Virus record (IMG/VR): IMGVR_UViG_3300022602_000024
Coordinates: 124,001-188,000 of that record
Length of the DNA stretch: 64,000 nucleotides
Direction: 5' to 3' (one strand)
Each line of letters begins with the position of its first letter. The stretch's first letter is position 1. This document shows positions 22,351-36,364 of the stretch, piece by piece. The notes under the pieces were generated by a model. The model was not told the DNA's origin. It saw nothing but the letters and a program-made list of their open reading frames with translations, and searched no databases. The position numbers were made by a program, and so were the translations under genes.

Positions 22351-22422
22351 AACTAACTCCTTTGATACAGTATTTACCAAAGGAGTTGTTAAATTTTATT
22401 ACGTTTCTATTATATACGCAGT

Positions 22423-22968
22423 TTATCGTATACCAGCGGCTGCACGCAATGATTCTGTAAAATCGTTTTTGGGTGCTTTGGTATCTACTTTGACACCAGC
22501 GGCAGTTTTTAGTTGGTCTATTGCTTCGTGTCCGTATTCACGTTCGTATGCTTCGGGACTGTTGGGTATTAAGTCTTGTAGTGATTCTAAACTTAGTTGC
22601 GTTTCTGTGCGTCCTTTGTAGTAACGAACACGCCAATCCTCAATCTTTTGCTCAGTTACATTCATTAGGTCTTCCATCAAAGCCATGATGTTTTCAGCAA
22701 CATCATGTTTACGATCCAACTCTACAAAAACAATGTAACTACCATCATCCATTTCACCCGAACTAACATCTGCATCAATAACCCAAGGATAACCTTTTTC
22801 AATAAATGCCACCAAGTCTTGTGCGGGCTCTTTGGCATCCAGTTTAAAACTGACCACAACAACATCGCAGTCGTCGCCTAGTTTGCTTTTGAATTCGTCA
22901 ATATGCAATTCAGGGTGTACTAAACGCTTTAGATCTCCGTGCTCAAGTCCTTCGAATATATTAGACAT
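22423..22968 (-). CDS. Conserved-type phage hypothetical protein
   Basis: Start at 22968 (MSNIFEG) has SD GGAG and ATG beside upstream stop. Confidence 0.6.
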   Translation of the reverse strand: MSNIFEGLEHGDLKRLVHPELHIDEFKSKLGDDCDVVVVSFKLDAKEPAQDLVAFIEKGYPWVIDADVSSGEMDDGSYIVFVELDRKHDVAENIMALMEDLMNVTEQKIEDWRVRYYKGRTETQLSLESLQDLIPNSPEAYEREYGHEAIDQLKTAAGVKVDTKAPKNDFTESLRAAAGIR

Positions 22969-23524
22969 TTGCAGCTCCTGGTTGTTGCTCTGGAGCAATA
23001 CCTGCTTCAGCATTGACATTTGACTGTTGATTTACAGCTTCATTGTCGGCGCCAGTTTCGTAGGCTTGATCGACTTCTTCCATGTCAACTGTACCCGACT
23101 CTAATTCTAACGCACCTTGTTGTATGTCCTGCATTAGTTTCTTGGGCATAATGATTTCAACCAGCCATACAGGACTTTTTACATCCTTGGGCACTTTAGT
23201 ACCAGGCTTAAAATCGTATGGGGTCTTAATCTTTACAGGGTGTTCAAAGTAATCTTTTTTGTAGTTTACTTCAATGTCGTATTCGCTTAGACGTGCAGCT
23301 CCGCGTGGATCAGGCATTTTTTTGTAGGGCCACATAAAAGTACATTTAACAAAATACTTTTCGTATTCGGGACCGTCTACTAATTCACCTTGTTTCCAGT
23401 TGGCAAATGCATATAAGTCAAGTTCGTCTACAACACGCTCAAAATCTAACAGTGTGCTGACAGCACTATCTGTCATTAAGATTTCTTTGGTGTTTTGTAA
23501 TAAGTCTCTAATTTTTGCAGGCAT
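22961..23524 (-). CDS. Phage hypothetical protein
   Basis: ORF track; preceded by GATAAATA. Confidence 0.6.
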   Translation of the reverse strand: MPAKIRDLLQNTKEILMTDSAVSTLLDFERVVDELDLYAFANWKQGELVDGPEYEKYFVKCTFMWPYKKMPDPRGAARLSEYDIEVNYKKDYFEHPVKIKTPYDFKPGTKVPKDVKSPVWLVEIIMPKKLMQDIQQGALELESGTVDMEEVDQAYETGADNEAVNQQSNVNAEAGIAPEQQPGAANV

Positions 23525-23560: not shown

Positions 23561-24856
23561 TTATCTGATCTGCTTTAATTTTTTGTCTTTTATTGTAACA
23601 TTATTGTTAGTATAATTTTGCAAATACCCATTATTAGTAAATGCAGGAACGGTGTTATTGGTTGCAGTACTGGGTCCTAAATAATAAAACGGACTTAGTT
23701 GTATAGTTAACCCAGTGGGTTTATTTGATTCGTACAAAAAATATTTTGGATCTATTTTGTCTATTAGAAAATTAATTCCAGCCTCCCAGGCTCCGTACAA
23801 TTTTGTATTTTTAAAGTTCTGATAGAACCAAGTATCCATTTCATTATAAAAACTGTTGGTGGGTTTGCTTGTTTGCCATGTAGATAGGTCATAGTCTGGA
23901 TATATTATAGATTTAACAATATTCTCGTATGTACTGCGCCTAGCGATATTATTCATATTGGCAAATTCTACCAGGTAGTTAAGATGTGAATTGTGTGCTT
24001 GATCAAACCAATTTTTAACCAGATGAGCTTGTTTAATACATATTTCCGGAAAGTCGGGAGTCCAGTAGAACAATTCGTTTGTAATATTAGAGTAATCTCC
24101 AACTATTGGGTGAGCACTATTTGTATGCAAATCAGAAAAGAATAAGTACCACTCTTTATTAATCAACAATAAACGTGGTTTATCGATCCCAATAACCACT
24201 GCAATTTTTTTACCCGAATCTAATAAAGCACGATGCTCGGGCAAGTTAAATTGATCATATTTGTCACTGTGTGCTGGCTGAAACCAATGTCTTGTTTGAA
24301 AAATCCATGACTCATCTCTAGTATCTGCTTGTTCGAGCATATTTTCTGCAAAATCGTGAATCCTGACAATGGTTTTTGGAAAATTTGTTTTAACCCAATT
24401 TAACAAAGGCTGTGCAGCAAACTGAAACTCACTTAGAGTATTTTCTGCACTGGTGTTAAATGGATCGTTGGTTACATCTTTTTCGCCGGTTTTAGGATAT
24501 CTAAAAATTATCTCGTCTAAATGTATACCATTTAATAAAAAAGCAAATGCTGCAGTTGTGCTATCACTGCCCCCGCTGCATTCTAAACGAATATAATCAT
24601 AGTTGTCTCGTAGTTGTTGTGCACGCATACGATACAATTCTCTAATGTTAACACCGGGCTCTATTGTCCAGTCTAACTTACCATAAGTATCTAAATTAAA
24701 TTTCCAACTTGGCCCTTGGTTAACTTTGGTTGCATACATATACGCCTGGGGTTTAGAATAAAATATCTTATCACCAACTTTGTAGTATCCAAGTTTGGGG
24801 TTGGTATCAACCCCGGGTATATCGTAAATTGCCATAAGTTTATTGTAACGAGACAC
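23561..24856 (-). CDS. PP-loop (adenine nucleotide alpha-hydrolase / asparagine synthetase-like) protein
   Basis: SGGSDS motif; clear paralog of 26940..28130 (KLGYY.VGDKIF, FYWTPD.PE, WQ/FQTSKPTNSFYNEMD). Confidence 0.7.
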   Translation of the reverse strand: MSRYNKLMAIYDIPGVDTNPKLGYYKVGDKIFYSKPQAYMYATKVNQGPSWKFNLDTYGKLDWTIEPGVNIRELYRMRAQQLRDNYDYIRLECSGGSDSTTAAFAFLLNGIHLDEIIFRYPKTGEKDVTNDPFNTSAENTLSEFQFAAQPLLNWVKTNFPKTIVRIHDFAENMLEQADTRDESWIFQTRHWFQPAHSDKYDQFNLPEHRALLDSGKKIAVVIGIDKPRLLLINKEWYLFFSDLHTNSAHPIVGDYSNITNELFYWTPDFPEICIKQAHLVKNWFDQAHNSHLNYLVEFANMNNIARRSTYENIVKSIIYPDYDLSTWQTSKPTNSFYNEMDTWFYQNFKNTKLYGAWEAGINFLIDKIDPKYFLYESNKPTGLTIQLSPFYYLGPSTATNNTVPAFTNNGYLQNYTNNNVTIKDKKLKQIR

Positions 24857-25751
24857 CTTGTGTCAGACGGCGCCAATCATTGGTTTGTTTGTGGTACCAA
24901 GTTTGAATTTCGGCATCAGGGGCTTGGTCAATGTCTTGGCAATGGTCGGGCTTGAATGAATCTAATACAACTTGGCTACGACCTGCTTTTAGCAAGATTT
25001 CGCGCCATTCTTTAAATTTACTATCCGACATATTTGCAGGCACTAATAACTGTGCTGGGCTATTCATTAACTCTAAATCTTTGCTGAATCCTTCTGATGC
25101 TAATGTTTTGACTCCAGCAACAGTCTGATTACCGGTAATACCCAGTGCATAAATTTGATTTTTACCTTCTTTGTATTGTTCAATGTCGCCTAGGAAGTTG
25201 ACAGAAAAATCAGTTGTACCATTTAGAACTGACAATACTGCTTCGCTGGTGCTTTTAAAAGGAATAACAACCAAGTTGGGATATTTTTTAGCAAGTTGTG
25301 TAACTACAAGATGTGTAGTTGTGCCAAGCCCACTGATCCCGATGCTCAATGATTTATCATGTGGTACTTCATTCCATGATTTGTATTTTTTACTTGCAAT
25401 AACAATAGGGGCACTGCATACTGGCAATAGTTCTTTAAATTGACCAATGTCGTGACTTTCAGACACAGGAAAGAAATTGGGTCTAATAAAAAATGCAGAA
25501 CTATTTGCTAGAATAGAATTGTTTTGTGAATTACTTAGTATATAGTTGGCTGCAACACTACCACCAGCCCCGGGTTTAGTATCGAAAATAAATGTGTATT
25601 TGTCTTGTATTTTGTTTGCTTCGTCAGCAAGCGAGCGATGAAAGTTTGCTGCCGTGTCGGATGCTGTCCAACTATAAATGATTGTTACAACTTCTCGTGC
25701 CTGTGCAGTTAGTACAGAGGCGAGAAGGAGAACTGATAAAAGTTTTTTCAT
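24840..25751 (-). CDS. Bug/TctC-family periplasmic solute-binding protein
   Basis: Signal MKKLLSVLLLASVLTAQA; KPGAGGSVA; GLGTTTHL; IPFKSTSEA. Confidence 0.8.
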   Translation of the reverse strand: MKKLLSVLLLASVLTAQAREVVTIIYSWTASDTAANFHRSLADEANKIQDKYTFIFDTKPGAGGSVAANYILSNSQNNSILANSSAFFIRPNFFPVSESHDIGQFKELLPVCSAPIVIASKKYKSWNEVPHDKSLSIGISGLGTTTHLVVTQLAKKYPNLVVIPFKSTSEAVLSVLNGTTDFSVNFLGDIEQYKEGKNQIYALGITGNQTVAGVKTLASEGFSKDLELMNSPAQLLVPANMSDSKFKEWREILLKAGRSQVVLDSFKPDHCQDIDQAPDAEIQTWYHKQTNDWRRLTQGVSLQ

Positions 25752-25831
25752 AAAATATTTCCTATTTGTTTGTATGAGTATACGAGAAAGTGAATGGGAA
25801 GTCAATCCCATTCACTGATTGAAATTACCGA

Positions 25832-26773
25832 TTAGCTGTTCTTGATGTTGTTGATCAATCCAGCAGTAAAGTAGTCTTGATATTGATCATAAACTACTGC
25901 GGTAGCGGCCTTGAATCTAGCACGCTCTGTCACAGACAAATGTGATACTTTGATACCATCCTTAGCGGCTTGTTCTTGTACGTCGGCAATGTCACTGATA
26001 CTTTCAACACGTTCAATTTGTGCTGCTTCTAATGCTGCTTGTTGGAAGATTGTTTGAGTTTCGGCGTCCAAGCTGGCCCACAAGTCTTTGTTGATGATGA
26101 TACTGGTCAAGAACAAACTGTGTTCAGTGTGATTGATAACAGTGGAAACTTTGTATTGTCCCATGTTGTAGATGCGTGGGTATGTGCTTTCGCCCATGTC
26201 AACAGATCGATTACCAATGGCACCAGCCAAGTCTTCAATGGCCATAACAACTGGTTCTGCACCGACTGCTTTGAATGTGTCCACTGCCACTGGGCAATTT
26301 GCAACACGAATCTTCAAACCTTTGAATTGCTCAATACTGTTGATTTCTTCGTTGCCAGGAATGACACGGAAACCACCTGAGTATGTGTAAGCCAGGCCTT
26401 TGACGTTGGACTTGGCAGCCAAGCCATCAAACAGCTGTTGACCAACTGCGCCATCTAACACACGGCTAGCATGATCGTGGTCTTCAAAAATGTAAGGCAT
26501 ATCTAATGCATACATATCTTTGTCTAGTTGCCCCAATGTAGTTGTGTACATTTGGCTGATGTTGATTTCGCCATTATTAACTAAATCTAACAACTGATAA
26601 CGATCAACGCATTGGCCATTGTTGTATTTTTCTTCCCATTCAGTACAACTCAAAATCTCAATTTCGATATTGTTGTTGGTTTTTTCAGCTACTACTCGGC
26701 TGAAATGTTGTGCTGCACGCAAGAATAGATCGTAAGGCTCATGTGCTAGAACCCATGTGAGTTTTTTTGTCAT
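25832..26773 (-). CDS. dctP: DctP-family TRAP solute-binding protein lacking an obvious signal peptide
   Basis: DMPYIFEDHDH, GLAYTYSGGFR, FKGLKIRV, GAEPVVM motifs. Confidence 0.8.
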   Translation of the reverse strand: MTKKLTWVLAHEPYDLFLRAAQHFSRVVAEKTNNNIEIEILSCTEWEEKYNNGQCVDRYQLLDLVNNGEINISQMYTTTLGQLDKDMYALDMPYIFEDHDHASRVLDGAVGQQLFDGLAAKSNVKGLAYTYSGGFRVIPGNEEINSIEQFKGLKIRVANCPVAVDTFKAVGAEPVVMAIEDLAGAIGNRSVDMGESTYPRIYNMGQYKVSTVINHTEHSLFLTSIIINKDLWASLDAETQTIFQQAALEAAQIERVESISDIADVQEQAAKDGIKVSHLSVTERARFKAATAVVYDQYQDYFTAGLINNIKNS

Positions 26774-26810
26774 TTTGTTTTCCTTGTCAAAAAGTTTTAA
26801 TTTTTTGGCT

Positions 26811-26920
26811 AGTAGAGATTCTACTTACGGGAATCGGCGTTCTAAGTGTATCACACTAGTAAAAGGGTTTCACTACCCTAAGCGTCAATTTTGTTCCGAC
26901 GTCGGTTAATCCGGCGTTGC
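26811..26920 (-). ncRNA. Candidate cis-regulatory leader RNA of the dctP-bug operon
   Basis: Hairpins AGGGT/ACCCT (26864-79), AGTGT/ACACT (26845-57), AGTAGA/TCTACT (26811-25); palindrome CCGACGTCGG; ATAAATA just upstream at 26927-33. Confidence 0.45.
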
Positions 26921-26939
26921 TAATTTTATTTATCGCTTA

Positions 26940-28130
26940 CTAAAATTTGTGATGTATATTGATACCGGAATCTACAAAATGTGCATCACCTAGTTCGTAA
27001 AAAGGACTCAGAAATCCTATAAACCCCACTGGATTACCCATTTCTTTGTTAAAATATTTAGTATCAATATTATCTACTATGTATTTCAGTCCAGCTTGCC
27101 ACGCAGAATATGCGTGGGTGTCTTTGAAATTTTGATAAAACCAGTAATCCATTTCATTGTAAAAACTGTTGGTTGGCTTGCTGGTTTGAAATGTTGCTGG
27201 ATCGTAATCTGGATACAACAAAGGTTTAATAATATGTTCAAAGGTGGTTCTTTGTGCAAAGCTGTAGTTAGGCCATCTGGCTAGATACTGTAGATGTTTG
27301 TTCTGTGGCATGGCAAACCAGTTTTTAATTATGTGTGCTTGTTTACATAATAATTCCGGCATGTCGGGAGTCCAATAAAAATATTCATTTGTGATATTGG
27401 TCCATCGGCCCACTTCAGGATTTGCATTATTGGCCTGAGCATCTAAGAAATACAAGTACCATTTGCCTTCTTTGATACAGACCTTGGGTTTATCAACTCC
27501 CCATAACATGCATACACTTTTGCCGCCATCGAGAGTGTGTTTGTGACTATCCACTGCATCTACTGTGTGTTTAAATGCATGCCCGGGCTGAAAGTAATCT
27601 TTGGTGCGAAAGACCCATTCTTCGTCATGCCCGGTGTTCAGCATGTCTTGGGAATAGTCGTGAAATGTAATTTTTGTGTTGGGTGAATTGTCTGCTATCC
27701 AGTTTAAAAATGGTTTAGCCGCATACTCCCATTCGCTTAACGTATTTTCTGGTTTAGTGTTGAACGGATCTGCTAACATATTCTTTTCCCCAGTCTTGGG
27801 ATATCGAAATACAACTTCGTCTAAATGAATTTTATTTTTTATAAAACTATACGCTGCCGTTGAACTATCGCCGCCCCCAGACACCTCTAGTCGAATATAA
27901 TCATATCGGTCTCGTAACTGTTGAGCACGCAGTCGGTACAATTCCAATAAGCTGGATTCTGGTTCAACTTTCCACTGCACCTTACCAAAAATATCATTAT
28001 TGAAATTCCAAACTGGAAAATGCCCGGACTTGCTGGCATCAATCAATGCCAGTGGTTTTACGTAGAAAATTTTATCTCCTACTGTATAGTAACCTAATTT
28101 GGGATTTTGTTCGTTGAGAATTTCGGTCAT
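26940..28130 (-). CDS. PP-loop (asparagine synthetase-like) protein
   Basis: SGGGDS motif; paralog of 23561..24856. Confidence 0.7.
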   Translation of the reverse strand: MTEILNEQNPKLGYYTVGDKIFYVKPLALIDASKSGHFPVWNFNNDIFGKVQWKVEPESSLLELYRLRAQQLRDRYDYIRLEVSGGGDSSTAAYSFIKNKIHLDEVVFRYPKTGEKNMLADPFNTKPENTLSEWEYAAKPFLNWIADNSPNTKITFHDYSQDMLNTGHDEEWVFRTKDYFQPGHAFKHTVDAVDSHKHTLDGGKSVCMLWGVDKPKVCIKEGKWYLYFLDAQANNANPEVGRWTNITNEYFYWTPDMPELLCKQAHIIKNWFAMPQNKHLQYLARWPNYSFAQRTTFEHIIKPLLYPDYDPATFQTSKPTNSFYNEMDYWFYQNFKDTHAYSAWQAGLKYIVDNIDTKYFNKEMGNPVGFIGFLSPFYELGDAHFVDSGINIHHKF

Positions 28131-28897
28131 AATGTATTGGTGCGTAGTCTGAAACTGATGGCCATTAATTTGTCTGTTGAATAACTAGCACATGGTTTAA
28201 TTTGATGCAAATATCTGCTGTCCCACACCATTATTCTTCCGGGACGGGGAGCCACTACATTTTCTACATCGCCAATGGGAAAGTTGCGTGGTTGATCTTG
28301 CTCGTATTTGCCGGTAAAATCTCCAGTGGTTGCATCATCACCGTGGAACAAAGTTTCACCGTACAATTGCGGGTGCCATTCGGTGTTGGCAAAATATACC
28401 AAGGTGTAGCAAGTATCATCATCCAAGAATGGGTTGTCACGGTGCACTGCCTTGCTGCGGGCACGAAACTCTACATCCATGCCGTCACCGTACACACGCC
28501 AGGCACTGTTGGCTGCACCGGGTTCGCCATTGCTTTTTGTTATTCCCTGCACTGGACTAATGCCCTGCATGTAATTCATACTTTCCGGAACTCCGGCAAT
28601 GGTGAACTTGTTTTCGGTCAACTCATTTATGTGTTGCCATAATTTAAACACTCGATTGGCACGATTTTCTAAACTGGCTTCGTCCCACGCCAGGGGTAAC
28701 CTCAACGCAGCCGGTAAATCTCTCGGGGTTACCCATTTGTTATTCCTGGGATACCAATTTGAATGTGGCCGATCATAGAAGTTTACGCAATATTCACTGT
28801 CTAGCAAATACTCGTATACATCATTTAGCAATGTTGAAGGTACTTCGTTATCGTACACCACCAATGAGTACGACCCCGGTTTAATTGATTTGGTCAT
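28127..28897 (-). CDS. 2OG-Fe(II) oxygenase (prolyl hydroxylase-like)
   Basis: HRD..YTLVYFANTEW..GETLF..PGRI..LH..ISFR; start moved to 28897. Confidence 0.8.
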   Translation of the reverse strand: MTKSIKPGSYSLVVYDNEVPSTLLNDVYEYLLDSEYCVNFYDRPHSNWYPRNNKWVTPRDLPAALRLPLAWDEASLENRANRVFKLWQHINELTENKFTIAGVPESMNYMQGISPVQGITKSNGEPGAANSAWRVYGDGMDVEFRARSKAVHRDNPFLDDDTCYTLVYFANTEWHPQLYGETLFHGDDATTGDFTGKYEQDQPRNFPIGDVENVVAPRPGRIMVWDSRYLHQIKPCASYSTDKLMAISFRLRTNTL

Positions 28898-28904
28898 AAT
28901 TCTT

Positions 28905-29561
28905 TTATGTATTATTGAGTCTGGTATTTCTTGTTGGTTGACACCCTGCAAGTATAACTTCATCTAACCAATATGACTCAATTGGTGTTATGTATTTGTG
29001 ATTGGCATCTACAGTTATAAACTTCATAATATCAGGGTCATCGTATGCAACAGGGAATTCTAATATGCGACTAACCCATTTTAAATAATGAGTAGTGTGT
29101 AAAAAGAAAGCCTCATGATCTAAGTAGTGTACAGGAAAATCACTGTTAAGTAAAGTGTTATAGTAATAATTTTGGGCAATTGGAGTGGTATGTTCTTTAC
29201 GAACTCGAAGTTGTTGTACTTGGTTAATATTTTGGTCCCGCACAATGATTGCTATTTGCACGTCGACCCCAAACTCACGAGCACGCTCTGCCACTTCTAG
29301 GATCTTGGGAACATAACGTATCCCATCAAAAAAGAAAGGGCAACTTACATTGGCTAGATGATAGTCTTTGCCGTCAAACATTGACTCTGTTAAACGTTCG
29401 GGGTGCACCCAATACTCAGCAAAGGGTTCTTGATCACTAGGTATCCAGTAGTTGTCCAGCATTTCTTCCCAACCAGCGACCTCGGGATGTAAACTTAATA
29501 ATCGACTAAACAAATGGTTACCTGATCCTTGGGGACCAGTGATAATTAATAACTTCTTCAT
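28905..29561 (-). CDS. Sulfotransferase-like P-loop protein
   Basis: IITGPQGSGNHL N-terminal loop; IIVRD motif. Confidence 0.55.
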   Translation of the reverse strand: MKKLLIITGPQGSGNHLFSRLLSLHPEVAGWEEMLDNYWIPSDQEPFAEYWVHPERLTESMFDGKDYHLANVSCPFFFDGIRYVPKILEVAERAREFGVDVQIAIIVRDQNINQVQQLRVRKEHTTPIAQNYYYNTLLNSDFPVHYLDHEAFFLHTTHYLKWVSRILEFPVAYDDPDIMKFITVDANHKYITPIESYWLDEVILAGCQPTRNTRLNNT

Positions 29562-30229
29562 ACAGTCATTATAGAACTGTTTTTCAATCTTGTCAAAAAC
29601 TTTCTGGTGTCGGGAGTAATAATACCAGTTAACTGCAATGTCACACGTGGTTTAAATCCTGCGTTGGCAGTACTGTGGGGAACATTTTGCCAATCAAATG
29701 TGGTCACATCGCCTGACTTCCAGCCGCGGTAATGGAAATTACCGTACTCCCAAAACTGGCCTGGTTCCCAATCAGTCAATGCTATGAAGTATCTACCAAC
29801 CCGAGTTGGATCTTCAGGAAACCATTTGTACAGTTTATCAATGTGTAGGTGCCATAATTGTCCGGGCATTTGTACATGTATTCGCTCCATGCAATCTTCT
29901 AACGCAAAATGATCACTTATGCGTTGCAGTGGCTCGGGCAATTTCCATGCCAAGTTGGTAATGGTGACTTTGGGATCTACACCAATGCGTTCTAAATCGT
30001 ATTCTTCTTCCTCTAGTTCGGGCTTGGGTACAAATACGCCTTCGCCTTTGAACCCGCGTGTTTCCCAGTTAGCTGGTTTTGAATCTGCCACAATCTGTTT
30101 TACTTCTTCATCCCAGTTAGGTTCAAATTTTCCTAACTTGATCACAGTATCGAACCGTGGGTCAATACGATCATTATCAAAATGATATTCACTTTTTTCT
30201 GCTAATTTATCCCAGCTGCTTTGTTTCAT
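29558..30229 (-). CDS. 2OG-Fe(II) oxygenase (Asp/Asn beta-hydroxylase-like)
   Basis: HLHID, PHSTAN..PRVTLQ. Confidence 0.7.
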   Translation of the reverse strand: MKQSSWDKLAEKSEYHFDNDRIDPRFDTVIKLGKFEPNWDEEVKQIVADSKPANWETRGFKGEGVFVPKPELEEEEYDLERIGVDPKVTITNLAWKLPEPLQRISDHFALEDCMERIHVQMPGQLWHLHIDKLYKWFPEDPTRVGRYFIALTDWEPGQFWEYGNFHYRGWKSGDVTTFDWQNVPHSTANAGFKPRVTLQLTGIITPDTRKFLTRLKNSSIMTV

Positions 30230-30846
30230 ATTACTGTTACCCTTATGTCATCCGCACCGTAATTTTGATTGTACTCGGTGGGCGGTTGTTGTATATTTAC
30301 TACTTTGGCCAACTCTTGATTTGTATTAACAATGTGTCCCTTATAACGCCATACTGCTTCTTGTATGTCTCGATTTTGTGCTGAGATAATTGTAGCCATT
30401 GTGCGTAAATCTTTATAGTACTGATCGTACCTAGGATAAGTTATATCGAAGTGCCCACATTTTACCCACCAGCCAAGACAAGCATCATTGGGACGTTGTA
30501 CCAACACAATGGGGCAGTCTGGCCAGTAATCCTTTAAGAAGTCTATGTGATGTGCAAATACATGACTCTTGATGATGCGCACACCCGATCCTCTGAACGG
30601 GCGGTCAAATTCGGCTTCGCATAATTCTTTGGTATAGCGATTGATCGTGTCAAAGAAGCCGCCAAATTCCATGCCGGGATCAAAGTATGCACCCATGTGC
30701 ATCAACTGTGTAGTGCCTGATGCATCATGATAATAAGTACGCTCTTCACTATAATCTGACCTATCAATGTCGGCACTGTAGTAAATATTCTTGCTTACAC
30801 TGCTCCATTTAGAACCTGGAGCACCAGTCATAAAAATATACTTCAT
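30226..30846 (-). CDS. Sulfotransferase-like protein
   Basis: FMTGAPGSKWS; IIKSH; IVLVQR. Confidence 0.5.
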   Translation of the reverse strand: MKYIFMTGAPGSKWSSVSKNIYYSADIDRSDYSEERTYYHDASGTTQLMHMGAYFDPGMEFGGFFDTINRYTKELCEAEFDRPFRGSGVRIIKSHVFAHHIDFLKDYWPDCPIVLVQRPNDACLGWWVKCGHFDITYPRYDQYYKDLRTMATIISAQNRDIQEAVWRYKGHIVNTNQELAKVVNIQQPPTEYNQNYGADDIRVTVI

Positions 30847-31817
30847 TCTTTACTTAAATCAATCTTTTCCAATACAGGTAAAAAGGTTGCACGTAATTCA
30901 TCCATGGTTCGCCGCAGGCCTGCAGGTGTTAACTCTGACTCTTCGTAAAACACTACATTTGATTCCATCCACTCTGCATATTCTCGACTGCGAATTGCAG
31001 CACTGAACTTTCGCTGGTACCAATCAACCACATCGGCTGGTGCACCTTTAGGCAACTCTAAACTCCAGGCCGCATACACTCTGATACCAGGTGCCACATC
31101 TCGCAACAATGGAACGTCAGGAAACTGTTTCATCGTTCTGGTTCCTGTAAATCCAATGGCACGAACCTTACCTGCATCGACTAATGGTTTAGCAACTGCA
31201 ATGGGCATGATACCAAACTCTGTGCCGACCCGGCCATCATACTGTGCTACACTTTGTACTGCTGGTGCTGGCCCATTGAACTTGATTGGCTTGACCATGT
31301 CTCTATTGCCATGTCCTTTTTCCATCAAGTATTCAAATGCAGTACGATGTGCTCCGCCCCCGACAGCTATGTTAATAGGAGCACTGGTGATTCGAATAAG
31401 TCTTATAAACTCCTCAGGAGTAGTAATAGTGCTCTTAGTACTTGCTACTAATACTAATGGGCTCTTACCCATTGTTAGTACATCTGTAAAATCATCATAG
31501 CAAAACTTTTTAACTTTCTTTTCCCAAATGTCATTGGTAACATATGTACTCATATGACTAGGCAAGCTAATAGTATACCCATCTGCAGGCTCGCCTAAGA
31601 ATTTGTTTTGTGCAACTACGCTATCTGCTCCGGGAATGTTTTGTACCACATAGGTAAAATTAGGATTTGTTTTTTGTACAATCTCTGCTAGTTTTCTAAA
31701 TGCAATTTCATTACCAGCACCGGGAGTGTTGCCTACAATAACTGTCACTGGCCGAGTAGGTTCCCAGGCTAACGCTAGCACAGGTACTAGTAATAATATT
31801 GCTAAAAGTTTTTTCAT
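30843..31817 (-). CDS. Bug/TctC-family periplasmic solute-binding protein
   Basis: Signal MKKLLAILLLVPVLALA; PGAG, IPGADS, DAGKVRAIG, FPDVP. Confidence 0.85.
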   Translation of the reverse strand: MKKLLAILLLVPVLALAWEPTRPVTVIVGNTPGAGNEIAFRKLAEIVQKTNPNFTYVVQNIPGADSVVAQNKFLGEPADGYTISLPSHMSTYVTNDIWEKKVKKFCYDDFTDVLTMGKSPLVLVASTKSTITTPEEFIRLIRITSAPINIAVGGGAHRTAFEYLMEKGHGNRDMVKPIKFNGPAPAVQSVAQYDGRVGTEFGIMPIAVAKPLVDAGKVRAIGFTGTRTMKQFPDVPLLRDVAPGIRVYAAWSLELPKGAPADVVDWYQRKFSAAIRSREYAEWMESNVVFYEESELTPAGLRRTMDELRATFLPVLEKIDLSKE

Positions 31818-32377
31818 TTTGTTTCCTTGAATAATAAATTGTTAATTTCGTCTGGTATCCATGCAACTGGCATACGTTCGGGGTGCCATACAACACCAGC
31901 TATTGCTAATCTTCTGTCTATCCACGCTTCGCAGTTGCCATGTTCATCTGTAGCAAGTTCGGTGGCAGTATCTTGCAACTGTTCAATGTACAAATTATGA
32001 TAACTGTTTACTAATTTTGTTTCACCAAAATAATTCACTTGATGTGCAGTATCCAGGTGTCCTTCTATTTCGCCTATTTTGCCGCCTAATATGTCTGTTA
32101 GTAAAAAACAACCATGGCAAACACCAACCACAGGCTTTTGTTGCTTTATTGTTTCTATTACTAGGTTTAACTCTGTTGTTCTACGTACTGCACTATCATC
32201 CCCGCCGGTTATAACAAGTGCATCAATTGAATTGGCCAATTCTGTAAAATCTTGATCTGCTCTATTTGCAATAGGAACGAGCGTATGACTTTTTAAATAC
32301 ACGTACCACAGGTGTTCCAGTGAATCATACGCTCGACCTTTATGAAATAAAACTCGTTGAGTGAGTCCTATCTTCAA
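31814..32377 (-). CDS. Class I glutamine amidotransferase-like (peptidase C26/PuuD-like)
   Basis: ITGGDD, GVCHG, VNSYH, WHPE; likely TTG start at 32377 beside upstream stop. Confidence 0.8.
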   Translation of the reverse strand: MKIGLTQRVLFHKGRAYDSLEHLWYVYLKSHTLVPIANRADQDFTELANSIDALVITGGDDSAVRRTTELNLVIETIKQQKPVVGVCHGCFLLTDILGGKIGEIEGHLDTAHQVNYFGETKLVNSYHNLYIEQLQDTATELATDEHGNCEAWIDRRLAIAGVVWHPERMPVAWIPDEINNLLFKETK

Positions 32378-32378
32378 A

Positions 32379-33071
32379 TTACCATCCGTAAGCGTCAGCA
32401 ACCAATTGCTTGCCGGATTTAGCAGCAACTGTATTACGGCAGCTAATATCATACAGGTCTCTGCGCATTGCAGCTACCAACTCTTGTATACGGTCCATAT
32501 TTTCTTCTGTGACCAATTGTTCTAATTTGCGTCCGCCGATGTTGGCATGGAAGCCTTCGTCCTTGGCAATCTTGCGATATGCACCAGAGATAAACTCATC
32601 TTCAATACAGTCGGCCATGGTGTTCCATACTGCTTCTGCACGACCTTCAGCAACTAGTTGATAAGCGGCCAATGCAACTGGATCAGTTTCGGCACCGTAC
32701 TTGGCTAATAGTCCAGCGCCTTTAGCAGTTGGTTTTGCAGCCTCTTTAGCAATAGCAGCTTCAACATCAACTGGGCCGCCTTGGATGTGTTCAATGACTT
32801 CTTTGACTAAACGGAAGTGCACTGCTTCATCGTGTGCTTGTTGTGTTAACAGTTGTAGTTCTACTGGATCTGCGTCTGCGGGCATTGTAGCGATTGCTTG
32901 GCTGATTTCAACCATGTTCATACGCTCATTTACCATACGACCAACGAAGTGTTCTACTAGTTCTTCCTGGGCAGGCTTTGAGTCAAAGTATGCTTTGACA
33001 TTGTGTTGGCTTGCTCGGAATAGTGCTTGATTGTCTGCTACGATTTGAGCAACAAATTGTTTTGCGTTCAT
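32379..33071 (-). CDS. Ferritin-like di-iron protein
   Basis: Two ExxH motifs (DEAVH, DEGFH) plus NERMNMVE and AEGRAE helices. Confidence 0.7.
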   Translation of the reverse strand: MNAKQFVAQIVADNQALFRASQHNVKAYFDSKPAQEELVEHFVGRMVNERMNMVEISQAIATMPADADPVELQLLTQQAHDEAVHFRLVKEVIEHIQGGPVDVEAAIAKEAAKPTAKGAGLLAKYGAETDPVALAAYQLVAEGRAEAVWNTMADCIEDEFISGAYRKIAKDEGFHANIGGRKLEQLVTEENMDRIQELVAAMRRDLYDISCRNTVAAKSGKQLVADAYGW

Positions 33072-33165
33072 AAATTCTCCTAGTGTATTTAATGAATTTT
33101 AACAAGAATAAAAATTTTAATATCTTGTTTAAATATTTACCAAAAAATAATATTTTTTTAACTAC

Positions 33166-33834
33166 TTATTGATTTTTTAAATAACTAGCGTAAAATTCAT
33201 TGGCTATTTCTATATATTTTTTATCTCCATTTACAAAATTATCTATTCTTACGATGTTGTTGTGCATACTTTGTTGATTGTGTACTTCAGAAAAGTCTAT
33301 ATTCAGTAATCGTGCAGAATCTGGACTTGCATTTCTTAGTTTTAGAAAATCGTCTAATATCTGTTGCACTTTAAATGGATGATGTGGCTTAGCGTTTGGA
33401 TGCCAGTTTGTATTTTTATTTGCCCATATTTCTCGACATTTTACTATGTCATCGGCAGTAGTTGGGTATACTGCAATTATTTTTGCATTAGTAAAGGTAT
33501 TTAACAATGAGTTGATGCATATTAAATGTGTTGGGATAATGCATATTTTATGGGTATCGTATATTTTGATCTTAGTAACAAAATCTTTAAATAATTCATT
33601 GTTGTTGTTATTAAGTTCTGTAACTGCATTCAGCAGTTGATACGGGGATCCTGCTCCCAACAACAATGGGATAAAATTTGTTATTTGTTCTCGTTGAATA
33701 TGTCCATTTACTGCGCCGTTGGGCAAAATTCGTCCAACTGTATCACCAGTTAATAATATTTCAGTTAACGCACTAATAAATTGCCCGCCAGCACCTGCGT
33801 GATAGCATACAAAATATATTTTTTGATCGATCAT
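33166..33834 (-). CDS. Sulfotransferase-like hypothetical protein
   Basis: VCYHAGAGGQFI N-terminal loop; ..PTH motif. Confidence 0.4.
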   Translation of the reverse strand: MIDQKIYFVCYHAGAGGQFISALTEILLTGDTVGRILPNGAVNGHIQREQITNFIPLLLGAGSPYQLLNAVTELNNNNNELFKDFVTKIKIYDTHKICIIPTHLICINSLLNTFTNAKIIAVYPTTADDIVKCREIWANKNTNWHPNAKPHHPFKVQQILDDFLKLRNASPDSARLLNIDFSEVHNQQSMHNNIVRIDNFVNGDKKYIEIANEFYASYLKNQ

Positions 33835-33875
33835 TTATGTGTAAATAAAATACTATTTATAAACAAAGAATTTCA

Positions 33876-34613
33876 ATGAATACTAAAATTTTTAAACTAA
33901 TCAAAGAAAATTTGCAAGAATCATTTAGTTTACCCAAGTACCAGAATATCATCATAGATGAAACAACTGCGGTAGATCAACTGCCATGGACACCTGCTCG
34001 CTACAGAAAGTTCAAGGACTCTGTAGAAGCTGAGTTGAGTCTCCCCTGTGACTATATTGGTGCCTTAGGTGCGATTGTTGCCGACCTCAGTGAACGTTAC
34101 ACACATCGTTTCTTTGCAGAAATCTGGAAACCCAGAACTGGTGATTATGACTACACTGGCTGGGCACTTGCAGATGAAATCAACAAACAAGATCCTCAAG
34201 CAGTGCTTGATGTAGGTTGCGGATATCATCCTTTCAAAGGACGTATCGACAATCTAGTAGGAATCGATCCTTACAACAACTGCGCTGACTTTGAAGTTGA
34301 TATATTAGACTATAGAGTTAAACAAAAATATGATCATATCATTGCATTAGGATCAATTAACTTCAACAGTCGAGATGAGATTGAAGCACGTTTTGCACAT
34401 TGTGTAGATTTGCTTGCACCCAATGGCCGGTTTTATCTACGTGCTAACCCTGGCATTGCACACAAGACTGGACCTTATGTGGATATCTTTCCTTGGAGTT
34501 TTGAAATAGTATCCGAGTTTGCTGAAAAGTATAACTTAAAATTGTTAGAATTCAAACGTGACGGCAACGAGCGACTGTATTTTAGTTATCAAAAAATTAA
34601 AGCAACTCATTGA
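33876..34613 (+). CDS. Class I SAM-dependent methyltransferase with N-terminal helical domain
   Basis: VLDVGCG motif I, GIDPY, YDHIIALGSI. Confidence 0.8.
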   Translation: MNTKIFKLIKENLQESFSLPKYQNIIIDETTAVDQLPWTPARYRKFKDSVEAELSLPCDYIGALGAIVADLSERYTHRFFAEIWKPRTGDYDYTGWALADEINKQDPQAVLDVGCGYHPFKGRIDNLVGIDPYNNCADFEVDILDYRVKQKYDHIIALGSINFNSRDEIEARFAHCVDLLAPNGRFYLRANPGIAHKTGPYVDIFPWSFEIVSEFAEKYNLKLLEFKRDGNERLYFSYQKIKATH

Positions 34614-35433
34614 TATCTATCTTCCACGGAATAGAGATTTGTGCATTTGCATATTGGTTAATCAACTCTATGCAATTTGCACGTCGATCATCTGTTAACT
34701 GGATGCCCACAAACTCTGACATTTCTTCTAACAAACCAATTATTTGCTGATTGGCAATGGTATGAAATGGCAAGTTATATTCGGGTGCAGCAGCAAATGG
34801 CACAAGTTTAGCAAATTGTTGACTGTACCATCCAACAATTAATTTTTCCATTGCACAGATAAGTTGAAGATTTGAGTCAACTGTGTCAAAAGTGATGCTG
34901 CCAAATTTGTCAGTTATCAATGTATACTTTGCTGGGTAAAATTTTTGAAATAATGTAGTCAACTTGTCAAGAGCAAATTTTGTTCTATCTTTGGCAATGT
35001 TTTTATACACACTATTAAACACAATTTGGTCAAAGTCGTTGTCGGTAAATGTAATATTGATCACTTTGCAGTTTTCTATAGATTCAGTGATTATACTGGG
35101 ATCAAGTGAATGACTAGCAATAGAAATAATCTTTGGTTCTTCTTGGTAATTTATTTGAAATCGGCTTTCAAACCAAGTTTGATATTCTGTAAAATTGTTG
35201 GTATAGTCTGAGAGACGAGGATTGGTATACTCGGCAAACTTGGCAAATGCCTGTATGGAAATAATGTCTTGGAAATTGTGTAGGTGCAACCACTCTCGAT
35301 TTTTGTGTGCATATACAGGATCATTTAATGGGTTTAGAGGATAACAAAAACCATTAAGAAGAAGTGCAATAAATCTACCCGAGGCTCCGCCTAGATACCT
35401 GACTACAACAGCTGGACATGGACAAGAAATCAT
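34597..35433 (-). CDS. Sulfotransferase-like hypothetical protein
   Basis: VRYLGGASGRFI loop, similar to 33166..33834. Confidence 0.4.
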   Translation of the reverse strand: MISCPCPAVVVRYLGGASGRFIALLLNGFCYPLNPLNDPVYAHKNREWLHLHNFQDIISIQAFAKFAEYTNPRLSDYTNNFTEYQTWFESRFQINYQEEPKIISIASHSLDPSIITESIENCKVINITFTDNDFDQIVFNSVYKNIAKDRTKFALDKLTTLFQKFYPAKYTLITDKFGSITFDTVDSNLQLICAMEKLIVGWYSQQFAKLVPFAAAPEYNLPFHTIANQQIIGLLEEMSEFVGIQLTDDRRANCIELINQYANAQISIPWKIDINELL

Positions 35434-35557: not shown

Positions 35558-36364
35558 ATGAAAGATGACAAGTTCACACTAAACCAAAAGGAGGCACACT
35601 TGTCCAAACGCAGAAATCGATTAGTAGAAACCCAAGTATATCAACAACCCAAACAAGTCAAATACAAACAACCCGATTTAAAAATAGTAAATGACGACTA
35701 TGTAGTTCAAAGACGTAGAAAAGTAGAATTAATCCCCAAGAGTCTAAATCAAGAAACTTATATTGATTTATTGACCAATCCCCACAAACTTATTATATTT
35801 GCAACAGGACCAGCAGGCACGGGTAAAACCATGCTGGCGGTAATGGCTGCAATACAGGCATATCAAGCAGGCGACTGTAATAAAATTGTAATCACACGTC
35901 CCGCAGTAGGTGTGGACGACGAACAACATGGCTTTTTACCTGGGGACCTGAACGCAAAAATGGCACCATGGACCAGACCAATATTAGACGTATTTGCCGA
36001 ATACTATCGGCCTGTAGAAATCACTAAAATGCTAGAAGAACAAACAATCGAGGTATCTCCACTGGCATTTATGCGAGGGCGGACATTTAAAAATTCGTGG
36101 ATCATTGCTGACGAGATGCAGAATGCCACGCCAAGTCAAATGAAAATGCTGCTCACCCGCTTAGGTGATAATAGTAAGATGGTAGTAACTGGGGACACAC
36201 AACAGGCTGACCGCAAAGAGAACAATAATGGTCTCATTGATTTCAAGCGTTTAGTTACAGAATATCAAAACTGTAAGTACGTTAGCGGCATTGAGTTTGA
36301 AGGTAGAGATATTCACCGTCATGCTGCTGTTGTGGAAATCCTAAAGATATATAAAGAACTTTAA
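35558..36364 (+). CDS. phoH: PhoH-like ATPase
   Basis: GPAGTGKT, LGFLPG-like HGFLPGD, PLAFMRGRTF, DEMQN, GDTQQAD. Confidence 0.95.
   Translation: MKDDKFTLNQKEAHLSKRRNRLVETQVYQQPKQVKYKQPDLKIVNDDYVVQRRRKVELIPKSLNQETYIDLLTNPHKLIIFATGPAGTGKTMLAVMAAIQAYQAGDCNKIVITRPAVGVDDEQHGFLPGDLNAKMAPWTRPILDVFAEYYRPVEITKMLEEQTIEVSPLAFMRGRTFKNSWIIADEMQNATPSQMKMLLTRLGDNSKMVVTGDTQQADRKENNNGLIDFKRLVTEYQNCKYVSGIEFEGRDIHRHAAVVEILKIYKEL

What the first reader, a model, noticed from the sequence alone, without database searches (positions are those of the whole stretch)
23561..35433. 12-kb biosynthetic-looking island interleaved with solute-binding proteins
Seen: 2 PP-loop proteins, GATase, ferritin-like di-iron protein, 2 2OG-Fe(II) oxygenases, 4 sulfotransferase-like ORFs, methyltransferase, and 3 binding proteins, mostly coupled. 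Established: PP-loop synthetases with a GATase perform amidation; di-iron and 2OG enzymes hydroxylate. Inference: a pathway making or modifying a small molecule (signal or metabolite sensed by the binding proteins), or modifying proteins, tRNA or surface glycans. I recognise no named pathway.
Basis: partly seen in the sequence, partly recalled or inferred. Interest (0 to 1): 0.7.

Follow-up and report, generated by a model that had tools for sequence, protein, structure and literature searches.

The report
Phage acid-capture and ligase gene island
A 354-kb lake-water phage carries a tightly packed 12-kb gene island that pairs a virus-only family of asparagine-synthetase-like enzymes with organic-acid binding proteins and adds hydroxylating and sulfotransferase-like enzymes; these gene groups recur together in many unrelated phages, but their product is unknown.

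Summary
Window 23561-35433 holds 14 genes of a 354-kb freshwater jumbo phage: two PP-loop proteins, two TctC receptors with signal peptides, one DctP receptor without a signal peptide, a class-I glutaminase, a ferritin-like di-iron protein, two 2OG-type oxygenases, two sulfotransferase-fold proteins, a weak SAM methyltransferase and two near-orphan proteins that I could not show to be sulfotransferases.

The PP-loop proteins fold like the synthetase half of asparagine synthetase B and beta-lactam synthetase. They lack its glutaminase half and belong to a large family seen almost only in viruses.

In 36 related phage loci with several different backbones, 40 of 57 PP genes have a TctC or DctP gene within two genes. 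The sets di-iron/glutaminase/TctC and sulfotransferase/AspH-like oxygenase/sulfotransferase also travel together. Sister phages carry different combinations of these sets, so the island is a mosaic of modules, not one fixed pathway.

Best guess, at moderate confidence: the phage captures organic acids and then adenylates and amidates them, with optional hydroxylation and sulfation. The substrate and product are unknown. I found no support for DNA or tRNA modification.

The modules match no named system. I rate this a new variant of phage auxiliary gene islands.

The parts
23561..24856 (-). PP-loop protein A1 (431 aa), AsnB-synthetase-like, no glutaminase domain
   Evidence: SGGSDS at residue 94. 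54% identical to A2. Member of the virus-only PP family. Its start overlaps the TctC1 stop by 17 nt.
24840..25811 (-). TctC1, a divergent TTT-type solute receptor. The real start is probably the internal MKKLL at about 25751. It has a signal peptide.
   Evidence: Pfam TctC 31.7 bits against a cut-off of 27. Signal-peptide-like N-terminus MKKLLSVLLLASVLTAQA, shared by all 41 relatives.
25832..26773 (-). DctP-type (TRAP) solute receptor without a signal peptide
   Evidence: Pfam DctP 199.6 bits. PDB TRAP receptors at E 4e-26. The GGFR arginine is at residue 136. The ORF starts at the first beta strand, as do all full-length relatives.
26940..28130 (-). PP-loop protein A2 (396 aa), AsnB-synthetase-like
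   Evidence: AlphaFold model with pLDDT 91. VIA Z 11.4 to AsnB 1ct9, and 8.5-10.4 to human ASNS, beta-lactam synthetase, TsnB9 and carbapenam synthetase, in an exhaustive search. Invariant S84, G85, G86 and D88.
28127..28963 (-). Probable 2OG-Fe(II) oxygenase (2OG-1); no counterpart in any fetched locus
   Evidence: Pfam 2OG-FeII_Oxy_3 E 2.5e-4, 22.4 bits, below cut-off. NCBIfam FlmC family E 6e-4. H174-R-D176 and LHQ at 252. No homologue in the fetched loci.
28905..29561 (-). Sulfotransferase-fold protein ST1
   Evidence: Model with pLDDT 81. The VIA top 17 matches are all sulfotransferases (TPST Z 11.3, 3-OST 10.6, NDST 10.5). Atlas TM 0.60-0.63 to Sulfotransfer_1/3 clusters. The family has 3169 relatives. 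No sequence-level family hit.
29558..30229 (-). AspH-like 2OG-Fe(II) oxygenase (2OG-2)
   Evidence: Invariant H129xD131, H185 and R195 in alignment A2. Atlas score 0.96 to viral PF05118 clusters, and structural matches to bacterial Sulfotransfer_3 + Asp_Arg_Hydrox fusion proteins. Found next to PP in distant loci L014, L016, L024, L028 and L036.
30226..30846 (-). Sulfotransferase-like protein ST2
   Evidence: Atlas score 0.94-0.96 to viral Sulfotransfer_3 clusters. Weak Pfam PF13469 match (E 0.046; 0.011).
30843..31817 (-). TctC2, a TTT-type solute receptor with a signal peptide
   Evidence: Pfam TctC 74.8 bits. PDB TTT receptors at E 3e-13. N-terminus MKKLLAILLLVPVLALA. At most 29% identical to cellular TctC in 401 sampled genomes.
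31814..32452 (-). Class-I glutamine amidotransferase / peptidase C26-like. This is the maximal ORF; the probable start is at about 32302.
   Evidence: Pfam GATase 48.2 bits and Peptidase_C26 51.4 bits. GVCHGCF at 110 and WHPE at 189. A public gene call gives 162 aa.
32379..33071 (-). Ferritin-like di-iron protein
   Evidence: E49, E82xxH85, E142 and E172xxH175 conserved. Weak R2/symerythrin and Pfam ferritin-like matches. 2474 relatives; the best 120 listed are at least 83% identical, and several are named 'rubrerythrin' by JGI.
33166..33834 (-). Near-orphan protein ST3; sulfotransferase nature not shown
   Evidence: No family hit. 11 relatives among 1.84 billion representatives. Contigs in two lake runs join about 33071 to about 33870, skipping it.
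33876..34613 (+). Probable class-I SAM methyltransferase; always next to PhoH in sister phages
   Evidence: Weak Pfam Methyltransf_12/25/23 and CMAS matches, E 0.01-0.04. Motif LDVGCG at 111. 74-80% identical copies beside PhoH in L017, L020, L022, L024 and L026, and a 34% copy in L021.
34597..35433 (-). Unassigned protein ST4, a weak paralogue of ST3
   Evidence: No family hit. hhalign against the ST3 family gives E 0.004 over 132 collinear columns.
35558..36364 (+). PhoH, the conserved flank that marks one edge of the island
   Evidence: Pfam PhoH 229.8 bits. Conserved flank in L005, L017, L020-L022, L024 and L026.
22961..23524 (-). Conserved phage gene of unknown function, the other edge of the island
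   Evidence: 70-76% identical and directly beside the last PP gene in all sister jumbo loci except L022, where two ORFs intervene. No Pfam hit.

Best explanation
The region is a variable auxiliary-gene island of a freshwater jumbo phage. It lies between conserved backbone genes (PhoH on one side, an unknown conserved gene on the other). It is assembled from three recurrent modules.

Module 1 is the core. It combines a virus-specific enzyme that looks like the synthetase half of asparagine synthetase B, an exported TctC receptor and a leaderless DctP receptor.

Proposed mechanism (inferred): the exported TctC proteins dock on the host's own TTT permease and raise uptake of particular organic acids. 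Inside the cell, the leaderless DctP-type protein binds a carboxylate through its conserved arginine. The PP-loop enzymes use ATP to adenylate a carboxyl group and pass it to ammonia or an amine, forming an amide.

Module 2 (di-iron protein, class-I glutaminase, second TctC) would supply glutamine-derived nitrogen and an oxidation step where it is present. Module 3 (sulfotransferase fold, AspH-like 2OG oxygenase, sulfotransferase fold) would hydroxylate and then sulfate the same or a related substrate. Several PP/receptor pairs in one genome would handle different acids.

Shown: the folds, motifs, leader peptides, gene order, tight coupling, recurrence across phage backbones and virus-restricted distribution.

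Inferred: the substrate class, the flow from receptor to ligase, and any link between the three modules.
For: - PP fold. In an exhaustive structural search, the five best matches are all AsnB-family carboxylate-adenylating enzymes: AsnB Z 11.4, human ASNS 10.4, beta-lactam synthetase 9.2, TsnB9 8.9 and carbapenam synthetase 8.5. The other PP-loop enzymes score 8.3 or less, mostly about 7. The PP-loop residues are invariant in 38 sequences.
- Receptors. Both types belong to carboxylate-binding families. The TRAP selectivity arginine is kept in the window copy and in 9 of 12 aligned copies. Its role is described in PMC4646407.
- Linkage. Of 57 PP genes in 36 loci, 26 have a TctC directly adjacent and 40 have a TctC or DctP within two genes. 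TctC makes up 39 of the 781 genes in those loci.
- Spread. The set recurs in at least three unrelated flank contexts. In a PP tree, the window's A2 sits among genes from other backbones.
- Localisation. All TctC copies have leader peptides and all full-length DctP copies lack them.
- No transporter of its own. The phage genome has no TctA or DctM.
- Module 3 mirrors bacterial single-chain fusions of Sulfotransfer_3 with Asp_Arg_Hydrox.
- Coupling. Overlapping junctions (mostly 4 nt) link GATase through A2.
- Distribution. The PP family is almost only viral. There are 86 large Atlas clusters without a common Pfam family (the three shown are 100% viral), and only 3 matches, all in MAG bins, in a scan of one genome for each of 185,579 species.
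- Occurrence. The island is present in at least 20 lake and freshwater metagenome runs from 2016-2023, by shared 31-mers (share 0.18-0.82).
Against: - No substrate is known, and no PP protein reaches any Pfam, NCBIfam or PDB sequence threshold.
- The nearest AlphaFold-DB cluster is labelled 'PAPS reductase domain' rather than asparagine synthetase.
- Structure prediction gave no support for a PP-DctP complex. The score was 0.01, which the tool says counts neither way.
- Three of 12 DctP copies lack the arginine.
- Most PP/receptor modules have no GATase, di-iron protein or sulfotransferase nearby, so the three modules may not share a substrate.
- ST1 and ST2 lack the usual basic residue of the PAPS 5'-phosphosulfate loop (seen by eye).
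- No RNA run was listed, so expression is unshown.
- The viral TctC proteins are only 29% or less identical to the sampled cellular ones. Whether they can dock on a host permease is therefore untested.
Confidence: 0.4

Rival explanations
1. Cell-envelope or protein remodelling. The AsnB-like enzymes would amidate carboxyl groups of peptidoglycan precursors, uronic acids or proteins. The AspH/LpxO-like oxygenase would hydroxylate lipid A or protein Asp/Asn. The sulfotransferase-fold proteins would sulfate glycans or tyrosines. The result would change the infected cell surface, for example to block superinfection. The binding proteins would be separate uptake genes.
For: ST1's best structural matches are protein-tyrosine and glycosaminoglycan sulfotransferases. 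2OG-2 resembles the Asp/Asn beta-hydroxylase family, which by general knowledge includes the lipid A hydroxylase LpxO. 2OG-1 weakly matches the flagellin-modification FlmC family. By general knowledge, cellular AsnB homologues amidate meso-diaminopimelate and O-antigen uronic acids. A published discussion proposes cell-wall modification for phage ligase-plus-GATase pairs (PMC10580990).
Against: This reading does not explain why the PP genes sit next to TctC and DctP genes in most loci. It does not explain the leaderless DctP either. No glycosyltransferase or envelope gene lies in the island. The PP proteins lack the glutaminase domain that the cellular envelope amidotransferases have.
Confidence: 0.2
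2. There is no common product. The island is a hypervariable dumping ground for unrelated accessory genes, and adjacency reflects shared insertion sites and co-transfer, not shared function.
For: Content differs between sister phages. Three genes (2OG-1, ST3, ST4) have no counterpart in any fetched locus. Lake contigs seem to skip ST3, or GATase through ST3. In G3-type phages, unrelated auxiliary genes (AhpC/AhpD-like by eye, radical SAM) lie beside the PP genes.
Against: The same pairs and trios recur in different backbones and different orders. The junctions from GATase through A2 overlap, mostly by 4 nt. The ST/AspH pairing matches a bacterial domain fusion. PP and TctC copy numbers rise together within loci.
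Confidence: 0.2
3. Sulfur-centred module. The PP proteins would act like PAPS-reductase or ATP-sulfurylase-type enzymes, the receptors would capture organosulfonates, and the sulfotransferase-fold proteins would use the resulting activated sulfate.
For: The closest AlphaFold-DB cluster to the PP model is annotated 'PAPS reductase domain' (E 5e-18, TM 0.64/0.70). TRAP receptors for isethionate are among the DctP matches. The 2OG-2 profile's best, though weak, PDB sequence hit is the sulfate-ester dioxygenase AtsK (E 0.07). At least two sulfotransferase-fold genes lie in the island.
Against: Solved PAPS reductase and ATP sulfurylase CysD score only Z about 7, against 11.4 for AsnB. PF01507 does not match anywhere in the genome even at E 10. 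Most PP/receptor modules have no sulfotransferase.
Confidence: 0.08
4. Nucleic-acid modification. The PP-loop proteins with the GATase would modify phage DNA bases or tRNA, like Gat-QueC, QueC or TilS.
For: A minority (10-14%) of distant viral clusters carry QueC matches. PP-loop plus GATase is the chemistry of the archaeosine and preQ0 pathways (general knowledge).
Against: The genome has no TGT/DpdA. TilS, MnmA and GMP synthetase match only the core domain, with Z of 8.3 or less. The partners are exported solute receptors.
Confidence: 0.05
5. Ribosomal peptide (RiPP-like) pathway. The AsnB-like enzyme would act as a lasso-type cyclase, with Asp hydroxylation, sulfation and methylation as tailoring steps.
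For: By general knowledge, lasso cyclases are AsnB homologues. Asp beta-hydroxylation and tyrosine sulfation are known peptide tailoring steps. ST1 resembles TPST.
Against: There is no room for a precursor gene. The only gaps are 166, 124, 94, 41 and 20 nt. No leader protease or RRE-type gene was detected. The receptors are left unexplained.
Confidence: 0.05

Closest known systems
Asparagine synthetase B family synthetase domains (AsnB, beta-lactam synthetase, carbapenam synthetase, hydroxyamidotransferase TsnB9)
   Same: The PP-loop SGGxDS motif is present. The whole-domain fold match is best among 48,161 PDB representatives (Z 8.5-11.4). The expected chemistry is ATP-dependent adenylation of a carboxylate followed by attack of a nitrogen nucleophile.
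   Different: There is no N-terminal Ntn glutaminase domain, only a 55-residue conserved N-terminal piece. No sequence-level match to PF00733. Sequence identity to these enzymes is 10-12%. The family is virus-restricted and linked to solute receptors.
Phage-encoded orphan solute receptors such as cyanophage PstS (general knowledge)
   Same: A phage-made periplasmic binding protein, without its own membrane permease, is presumed to plug into the host transporter to raise uptake during infection.
   Different: Here the receptors are TTT and TRAP types for organic acids. They are deeply diverged from cellular ones (29% identity or less). They come in several copies, one type is leaderless, and they are genetically paired with a ligase-like enzyme.
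TRAP (DctP) and TTT (TctC/Bug) solute receptors (reviewed in PMC5812351)
   Same: The Pfam families match above cut-off and the fold-level homologues are solved receptors. The selectivity arginine is kept in DctP.
   Different: The DctP copies have no signal peptide and are sometimes split into two ORFs. The genome has no DctQM or TctAB.
Bacterial fusion proteins Sulfotransfer_3 + Asp_Arg_Hydrox (with or without TPR); uncharacterised as far as I found
   Same: The same two activities are combined: a sulfotransferase fold next to an AspH-like oxygenase.
   Different: In the phage they are separate small genes in the order ST2, oxygenase, ST1. Neither reaches the Pfam thresholds, and the PAPS-loop basic residue is not evident.
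Phage amidoligase + GATase gene pairs (phiEco32, OM43 phages; discussed in PMC10580990)
   Same: An ATP-dependent ligase-type enzyme and a glutaminase are encoded together by phages, with no settled function.
   Different: The ligase family differs (PF12224 there, AsnB-like PP-loop here). Those pairs have no solute receptors.

Membership tests
Asparagine synthetase B family (PF00733 Asn_synthase) | PP-loop motif SGGxDS | tested here: met
   SGGSDS and SGGGDS. S84, G85, G86 and D88 are invariant in 38 sequences.
Asparagine synthetase B family (PF00733 Asn_synthase) | Sequence match to the family model | tested here: not met
   No Pfam hit at E up to 10. PF00733 finds nothing in the genome at E 10. 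The PDB profile search is empty.
Asparagine synthetase B family (PF00733 Asn_synthase) | Fold of the C-terminal synthetase domain | tested here: met
   Z 11.4 to 1ct9 with 285 aligned residues. The top five matches are all AsnB-family enzymes.
Asparagine synthetase B family (PF00733 Asn_synthase) | N-terminal Ntn glutaminase domain with catalytic Cys | tested here: not met
   Only about 55 residues precede the synthetase domain.
Asparagine synthetase B family (PF00733 Asn_synthase) | Carboxylate-dependent ATP pyrophosphatase activity | not testable with these tools
   Needs an enzyme assay.
TRAP solute receptor (PF03480 DctP) | Family model above cut-off, and the conserved carboxylate-binding arginine | tested here: met
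   199.6 bits against a cut-off of 23.4. GGFR with R136, kept in 9 of 12 aligned copies.
TRAP solute receptor (PF03480 DctP) | Export signal and a cognate DctQM permease | tested here: not met
   No signal peptide in any full-length copy. No DctM in the phage genome.
TTT solute receptor (PF03401 TctC) | Family model above cut-off, and an export signal | tested here: met
   31.7 and 74.8 bits against a cut-off of 27. Leader peptides in all 41 copies.
TTT solute receptor (PF03401 TctC) | Cognate TctA/TctB permease encoded alongside | tested here: not met
   No TctA in the genome. A host permease would be needed, and the host is unknown.
2OG-Fe(II) oxygenases, including Asp/Asn beta-hydroxylase PF05118 | HxD...H iron triad and a basic residue for 2OG | tested here: met
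   2OG-2: H129, D131, H185 and R195 are invariant. 2OG-1: H174-R-D176 and a distal His in LHQ.
2OG-Fe(II) oxygenases, including Asp/Asn beta-hydroxylase PF05118 | Family model above cut-off | tested here: inconclusive
   2OG-1 scores 22.4 bits against a cut-off of 27. 2OG-2 has no Pfam hit. hhalign against the genome's true PF05118 protein gives E 0.064. Atlas score 0.96 with 201 shared features.
PAPS-dependent sulfotransferases (PF13469/PF00685) | Sulfotransferase fold | tested here: met
   For ST1: Z 10.4-11.3 to TPST, 3-OST and NDST. For ST2: Atlas features and structure of its nearest cluster only. Not met for ST3 and ST4.
PAPS-dependent sulfotransferases (PF13469/PF00685) | 5'-PSB and 3'-PB cofactor motifs, and family model above cut-off | tested here: inconclusive
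   ST1 has GPQGSGNH and VRDQN. ST2 has GAPGSKW and QRPND. The usual Lys/Arg of the PSB loop is not in place. PF13469 scores only 13-14 bits for ST2.
Class-I glutamine amidotransferase | Family model above cut-off, and the Cys-His-Glu triad | tested here: met
   48.2 and 51.4 bits. Cys in GVCHGCF and His-x-Glu in WHPE.
Ferritin-like di-iron carboxylate proteins | Two E...ExxH helix pairs | tested here: met
   E49, E82xxH85, E142 and E172xxH175 are conserved. Family models reach only E 0.014-0.07.
7-deazaguanine DNA modification (Gat-QueC / DpdA systems) | A DpdA/TGT transglycosylase in the genome | tested here: not met
   PF01702 is absent from the genome, while all 14 control genomes match.

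The most novel reading that the evidence does not exclude
Abundant freshwater phages encode a self-contained 'capture and ligate' route. Exported viral TctC receptors hijack host TTT permeases for specific acids (possibly aspartate-like). A cytoplasmic, leaderless TRAP-type receptor hands the acid to a virus-only AsnB-like ligase. Di-iron/glutaminase and AspH-like/sulfotransferase modules then convert it into a hydroxylated, sulfated amide that the phage needs or uses as a signal. This would be a new class of virus-made metabolite. It would also be, to my knowledge, the first cytoplasmic role for a TRAP receptor.
Probability: 0.12. Interest if true: 0.85.

Novelty: new variant of a known kind. 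Interest (0 to 1): 0.6.

Why it matters
The phage group is common in lakes. The island's sequence turns up in at least 20 lake and freshwater metagenome runs, and its genes have thousands of relatives in public data.

The PP-loop family is one of the larger virus-only enzyme families without a function. One recent paper states that the role of phage sulfotransferases is unclear (PMC10580990).

A repeated genetic pairing of ligase-like enzymes with organic-acid receptors suggests that phages steer uptake and conversion of dissolved organic acids, a main carbon source in lakes, in a way not captured by current lists of auxiliary metabolic genes. The leaderless TRAP receptor is an oddity of its own.

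The pairing also makes the question testable. The receptors can be screened for ligands, and the hits fed to the enzymes.

Tried and rejected
**Searches that found nothing**
- Sequence searches of the PP proteins against Pfam, PHROGs, NCBIfam and PDB, as single sequences and as a profile.
- Megablast of the island against GenBank phages: no match.

**Tests that were uninformative**
- Predicted PP-DctP complex: score 0.01, which the tool declares is no evidence either way.
- Search for RNA runs: none listed.
- Promoter and terminator scan: counts near chance.
- The large protein searches for the di-iron, 2OG-2 and ST1 families returned only close, unnamed relatives. They gave family size but no function.
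- Literature searches for phage TctC/TRAP receptors, phage asparagine-synthase-plus-receptor pairs, and sulfotransferase-AspH fusions found no description of these modules.

**Ideas tested and dropped**
- amoC-phage identity: no AmoC gene found in the genome, though the control genomes did not match either, so this search has no positive control.
- Deazaguanine DNA modification: no TGT.
- PAPS-reductase identity by sequence: no PF01507 match.
- ST1 and ST2 as paralogues: not shown.
- ST3 as a relative of ST1: not shown.
- Host inference from TctC2: cellular copies are too distant. The 75% identical copy in a Haliscomenobacter MAG is probably binned phage DNA.

Full report
**Where the region lies.** The window is bases 124001-188000 of a 354,429-bp IMG/VR virus record, estimated 98% complete. 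It is therefore a jumbo phage. By shared 31-mers (share of sampled words 0.18-0.82), the stretch 26940-32452 is held in at least 20 lake and freshwater DNA metagenome runs from 2016-2023. Contig pieces identical to the window cover much of 29500-35450 in two of them. The flanks are ordinary phage genes. On one side lie PhoH and, further on, a clamp-loader-like gene. On the other lie a conserved unknown gene, a GH19 lysozyme-like gene and, by eye, DnaJ- and Clp-like genes.

**What is in 23561-35433.** There are fourteen ORFs, twelve on the minus strand in one direction. In transcription order they are:
- ST4 (34597-35433)
- a methyltransferase on the opposite strand (33876-34613)
- ST3 (33166-33834)
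- the di-iron protein (32379-33071)
- the GATase (31814-32452; probable start about 32302)
- TctC2 (30843-31817)
- ST2 (30226-30846)
- 2OG-2 (29558-30229)
- ST1 (28905-29561)
- 2OG-1 (28127-28963)
- PP protein A2 (26940-28130)
- DctP (25832-26773)
- TctC1 (24840-25811)
- PP protein A1 (23561-24856)

From GATase to A2, each junction overlaps by 4 nt, except one of 59 nt. TctC1 and A1 overlap by 17 nt. The only gaps are 166, 124, 94, 41 and 20 nt.

**The PP-loop proteins.** A1 and A2 are 54% identical and carry SGGxDS. No sequence library recognises them.

An AlphaFold model of A2, built from 38 homologues, has pLDDT 91. In a second look at Foldseek's candidates, and again in an exhaustive alignment against 48,161 PDB representatives, the five best matches are E. 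coli AsnB (Z 11.4), human ASNS (10.4), beta-lactam synthetase (9.2), hydroxyamidotransferase TsnB9 (8.9) and carbapenam synthetase (8.5). TilS (MesJ) follows at 8.3. The generic PP-loop enzymes (GMP synthetase, NAD synthetase, LarE, PAPS reductase, CysD) sit near Z 7 and match only the core.

All five top matches adenylate a carboxylate and then form a C-N bond. The phage proteins lack the N-terminal glutaminase domain. One caveat is that the nearest AlphaFold-DB cluster (TM 0.64/0.70) carries an automatic 'PAPS reductase domain' name.

The family is almost entirely viral:
- 86 large ESM Atlas clusters, the ones shown being 100% viral
- only uncharacterised Caudovirales proteins as close BFVD matches
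- three matches in a scan of one genome for each of 185,579 species, all in freshwater MAG bins

**The binding proteins.** DctP is a clear TRAP receptor: Pfam 199.6 bits, and PDB TRAP receptors at E 4e-26. It keeps the arginine that gives TRAP receptors their carboxylate selectivity (PMC4646407). Yet it begins at the first beta strand with no leader peptide. So do all 30-odd relatives, several of which are split into two half-size ORFs. A second leaderless copy lies at window 63377 onward.

TctC1 and TctC2 pass the Pfam cut-off. Like all 41 relatives, they have classical leader peptides.

The phage has no TctA or DctM. TctC2 is at most 29% identical to TctC proteins in 401 sampled Gammaproteobacteria genomes. 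These are therefore old viral lineages, not recent captures from a host.

**The other enzymes.**
- The GATase passes Pfam and has the Cys and His-x-Glu motifs.
- The di-iron protein has the full E, ExxH, E, ExxH ligand set. Its matches to R2, symerythrin, DUF455 and Ferritin_2 are only weak. It has 2474 relatives; the best 120 listed are at least 83% identical.
- 2OG-2 has invariant HxD...H...R. By Atlas features it is close to viral Asp/Asn beta-hydroxylase clusters. The Atlas model of its nearest cluster matches the AspH part of bacterial single-chain Sulfotransfer_3 + Asp_Arg_Hydrox proteins.
- 2OG-1 is a weak prolyl-hydroxylase-type or FlmC-type match.
- The ST1 model (pLDDT 81) has sulfotransferases as its 17 best structural matches, above the kinases that share the fold.
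- ST2 matches viral Sulfotransfer_3 clusters.
- ST3 and ST4 could not be assigned. ST3 has 11 relatives among 1.84 billion representatives, and ST4 is a weak paralogue of it.
- The methyltransferase is supported only by weak matches and by motif I.

**Neighbourhood conservation.** A scan of viral contigs with A2 returned 36 loci. I clustered all their ORFs. PP genes number 57 or 58 in these loci, TctC 39-41 in 25 loci, and DctP 32 in 22 loci. Of the PP genes, 26 have a TctC directly adjacent, 30 have a TctC or DctP adjacent, and 40 have one within two genes. TctC accounts for only 5% of the genes in these loci.

The set occurs in at least three unrelated flank contexts. These are the sister jumbo phages with PhoH, a second group with a FEN-like nuclease, and a third with radical-SAM arrays and AhpC/AhpD. 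In a quick PP tree, the window's A2 groups with genes from the other backbones rather than with the same-position genes of sister phages. This suggests module exchange. The tree is a FastTree with supports not inspected.

Two further sets recur. Di-iron/GATase/TctC2 appears in the window, L020, L026, L007, L008 and L025, and without the TctC in L022. ST2/2OG-2/ST1 appears in the window, L017, L020, L022 and L026, and without ST1 in L021. 2OG-2 also sits beside PP genes in distant loci L014, L016, L024, L028 and L036.

Sister phages carry different subsets at the same site. 2OG-1, ST3 and ST4 have no counterpart in any fetched locus. Lake contigs join about 33071 to about 33870, which skips ST3 (the flanking matches are short, so this is tentative).

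**Interpretation.** The evidence shows a mosaic of functionally linked modules rather than one fixed pathway.

For the core module, the most economical reading combines two facts. The enzyme fold belongs to carboxylate-adenylating amide formers, and both receptor families bind carboxylates. I therefore propose capture of organic acids followed by adenylation and amidation. Paralogous enzyme/receptor pairs would serve different acids. The glutaminase and di-iron module would be an optional nitrogen donor and oxidant, and the AspH-like/sulfotransferase module an optional hydroxylate-then-sulfate step.

None of these steps is shown. The complex prediction was uninformative, and no transcript data were listed.

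The rivals I keep are envelope or protein remodelling, a purely accidental island, a sulfur-centred pathway, nucleic-acid modification (weakened by the absence of TGT) and a RiPP pathway (no room for a precursor gene).

**Comparison with what is known.** The modules match no named system that I could find. One recent paper states that the role of phage sulfotransferases is unclear (PMC10580990). I rate the finding a new variant of phage auxiliary gene islands, with an unusual and testable core.

Noticed in passing
window 62889-63254 (-) and 63377-64000 (+, runs off the window); genome 189037-189399 (-): A second leaderless DctP-type gene is flanked by two copies of an unknown protein family ('c3', motif YAQNLYAAxCN...W..SWR..GG). 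In another phage group, the same family sits directly upstream of the PP genes. It may belong to the module.
   Followed up: partly
L005 7967-9011; L007 12178-13178; L021 12615-13593; L024 7795-8752: In several independent assemblies, the DctP-type gene is split into N-half and C-half ORFs of about 160 aa. These overlap by 4-17 nt.
   Followed up: no
L010 11183-11431; also L011, L012, L014, L016, L036: A small DUF2061 membrane protein (Pfam 48.3 bits) lies between the PP and DctP genes in one phage group.
   Followed up: no
L006-L008, L025 (about 1-9970); L009 and L018 in part: Arrays of three to four radical-SAM paralogues lie just upstream of the PP/TctC/DctP set in a third phage group. So does a peroxiredoxin/AhpD-like pair, identified by eye.
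   Followed up: no
genome 193040-194155 (-), 211506-212024 (-), 335860-336312 (-), all outside the window: Elsewhere in the genome lie a third, distant PP-family gene, a second 2OG-2-like gene, and a bona fide Asp_Arg_Hydrox gene (51.7 bits).
   Followed up: partly
window 33071-33872: Contigs in two lake runs join these two points, which suggests a co-occurring genotype without ST3. One contig in another run joins 31819 to 34083, which would remove GATase, the di-iron gene and ST3. The flanking matches are short.
   Followed up: partly
L038, L039, L040, L044, L045: PP and TctC2 homologues (up to 75% identical) lie in MAG bins labelled Methylococcaceae, Nanopelagicales and Haliscomenobacter. 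These are most likely phage contigs binned with bacteria, not host genes.
   Followed up: partly
window 16429-19577 and 21727-22380: Upstream of the island lie Clp-ATPase-like and DnaJ-like genes, identified by eye from their N-termini, and a GH19 chitinase/lysozyme-like gene (Pfam 30 bits).
   Followed up: no
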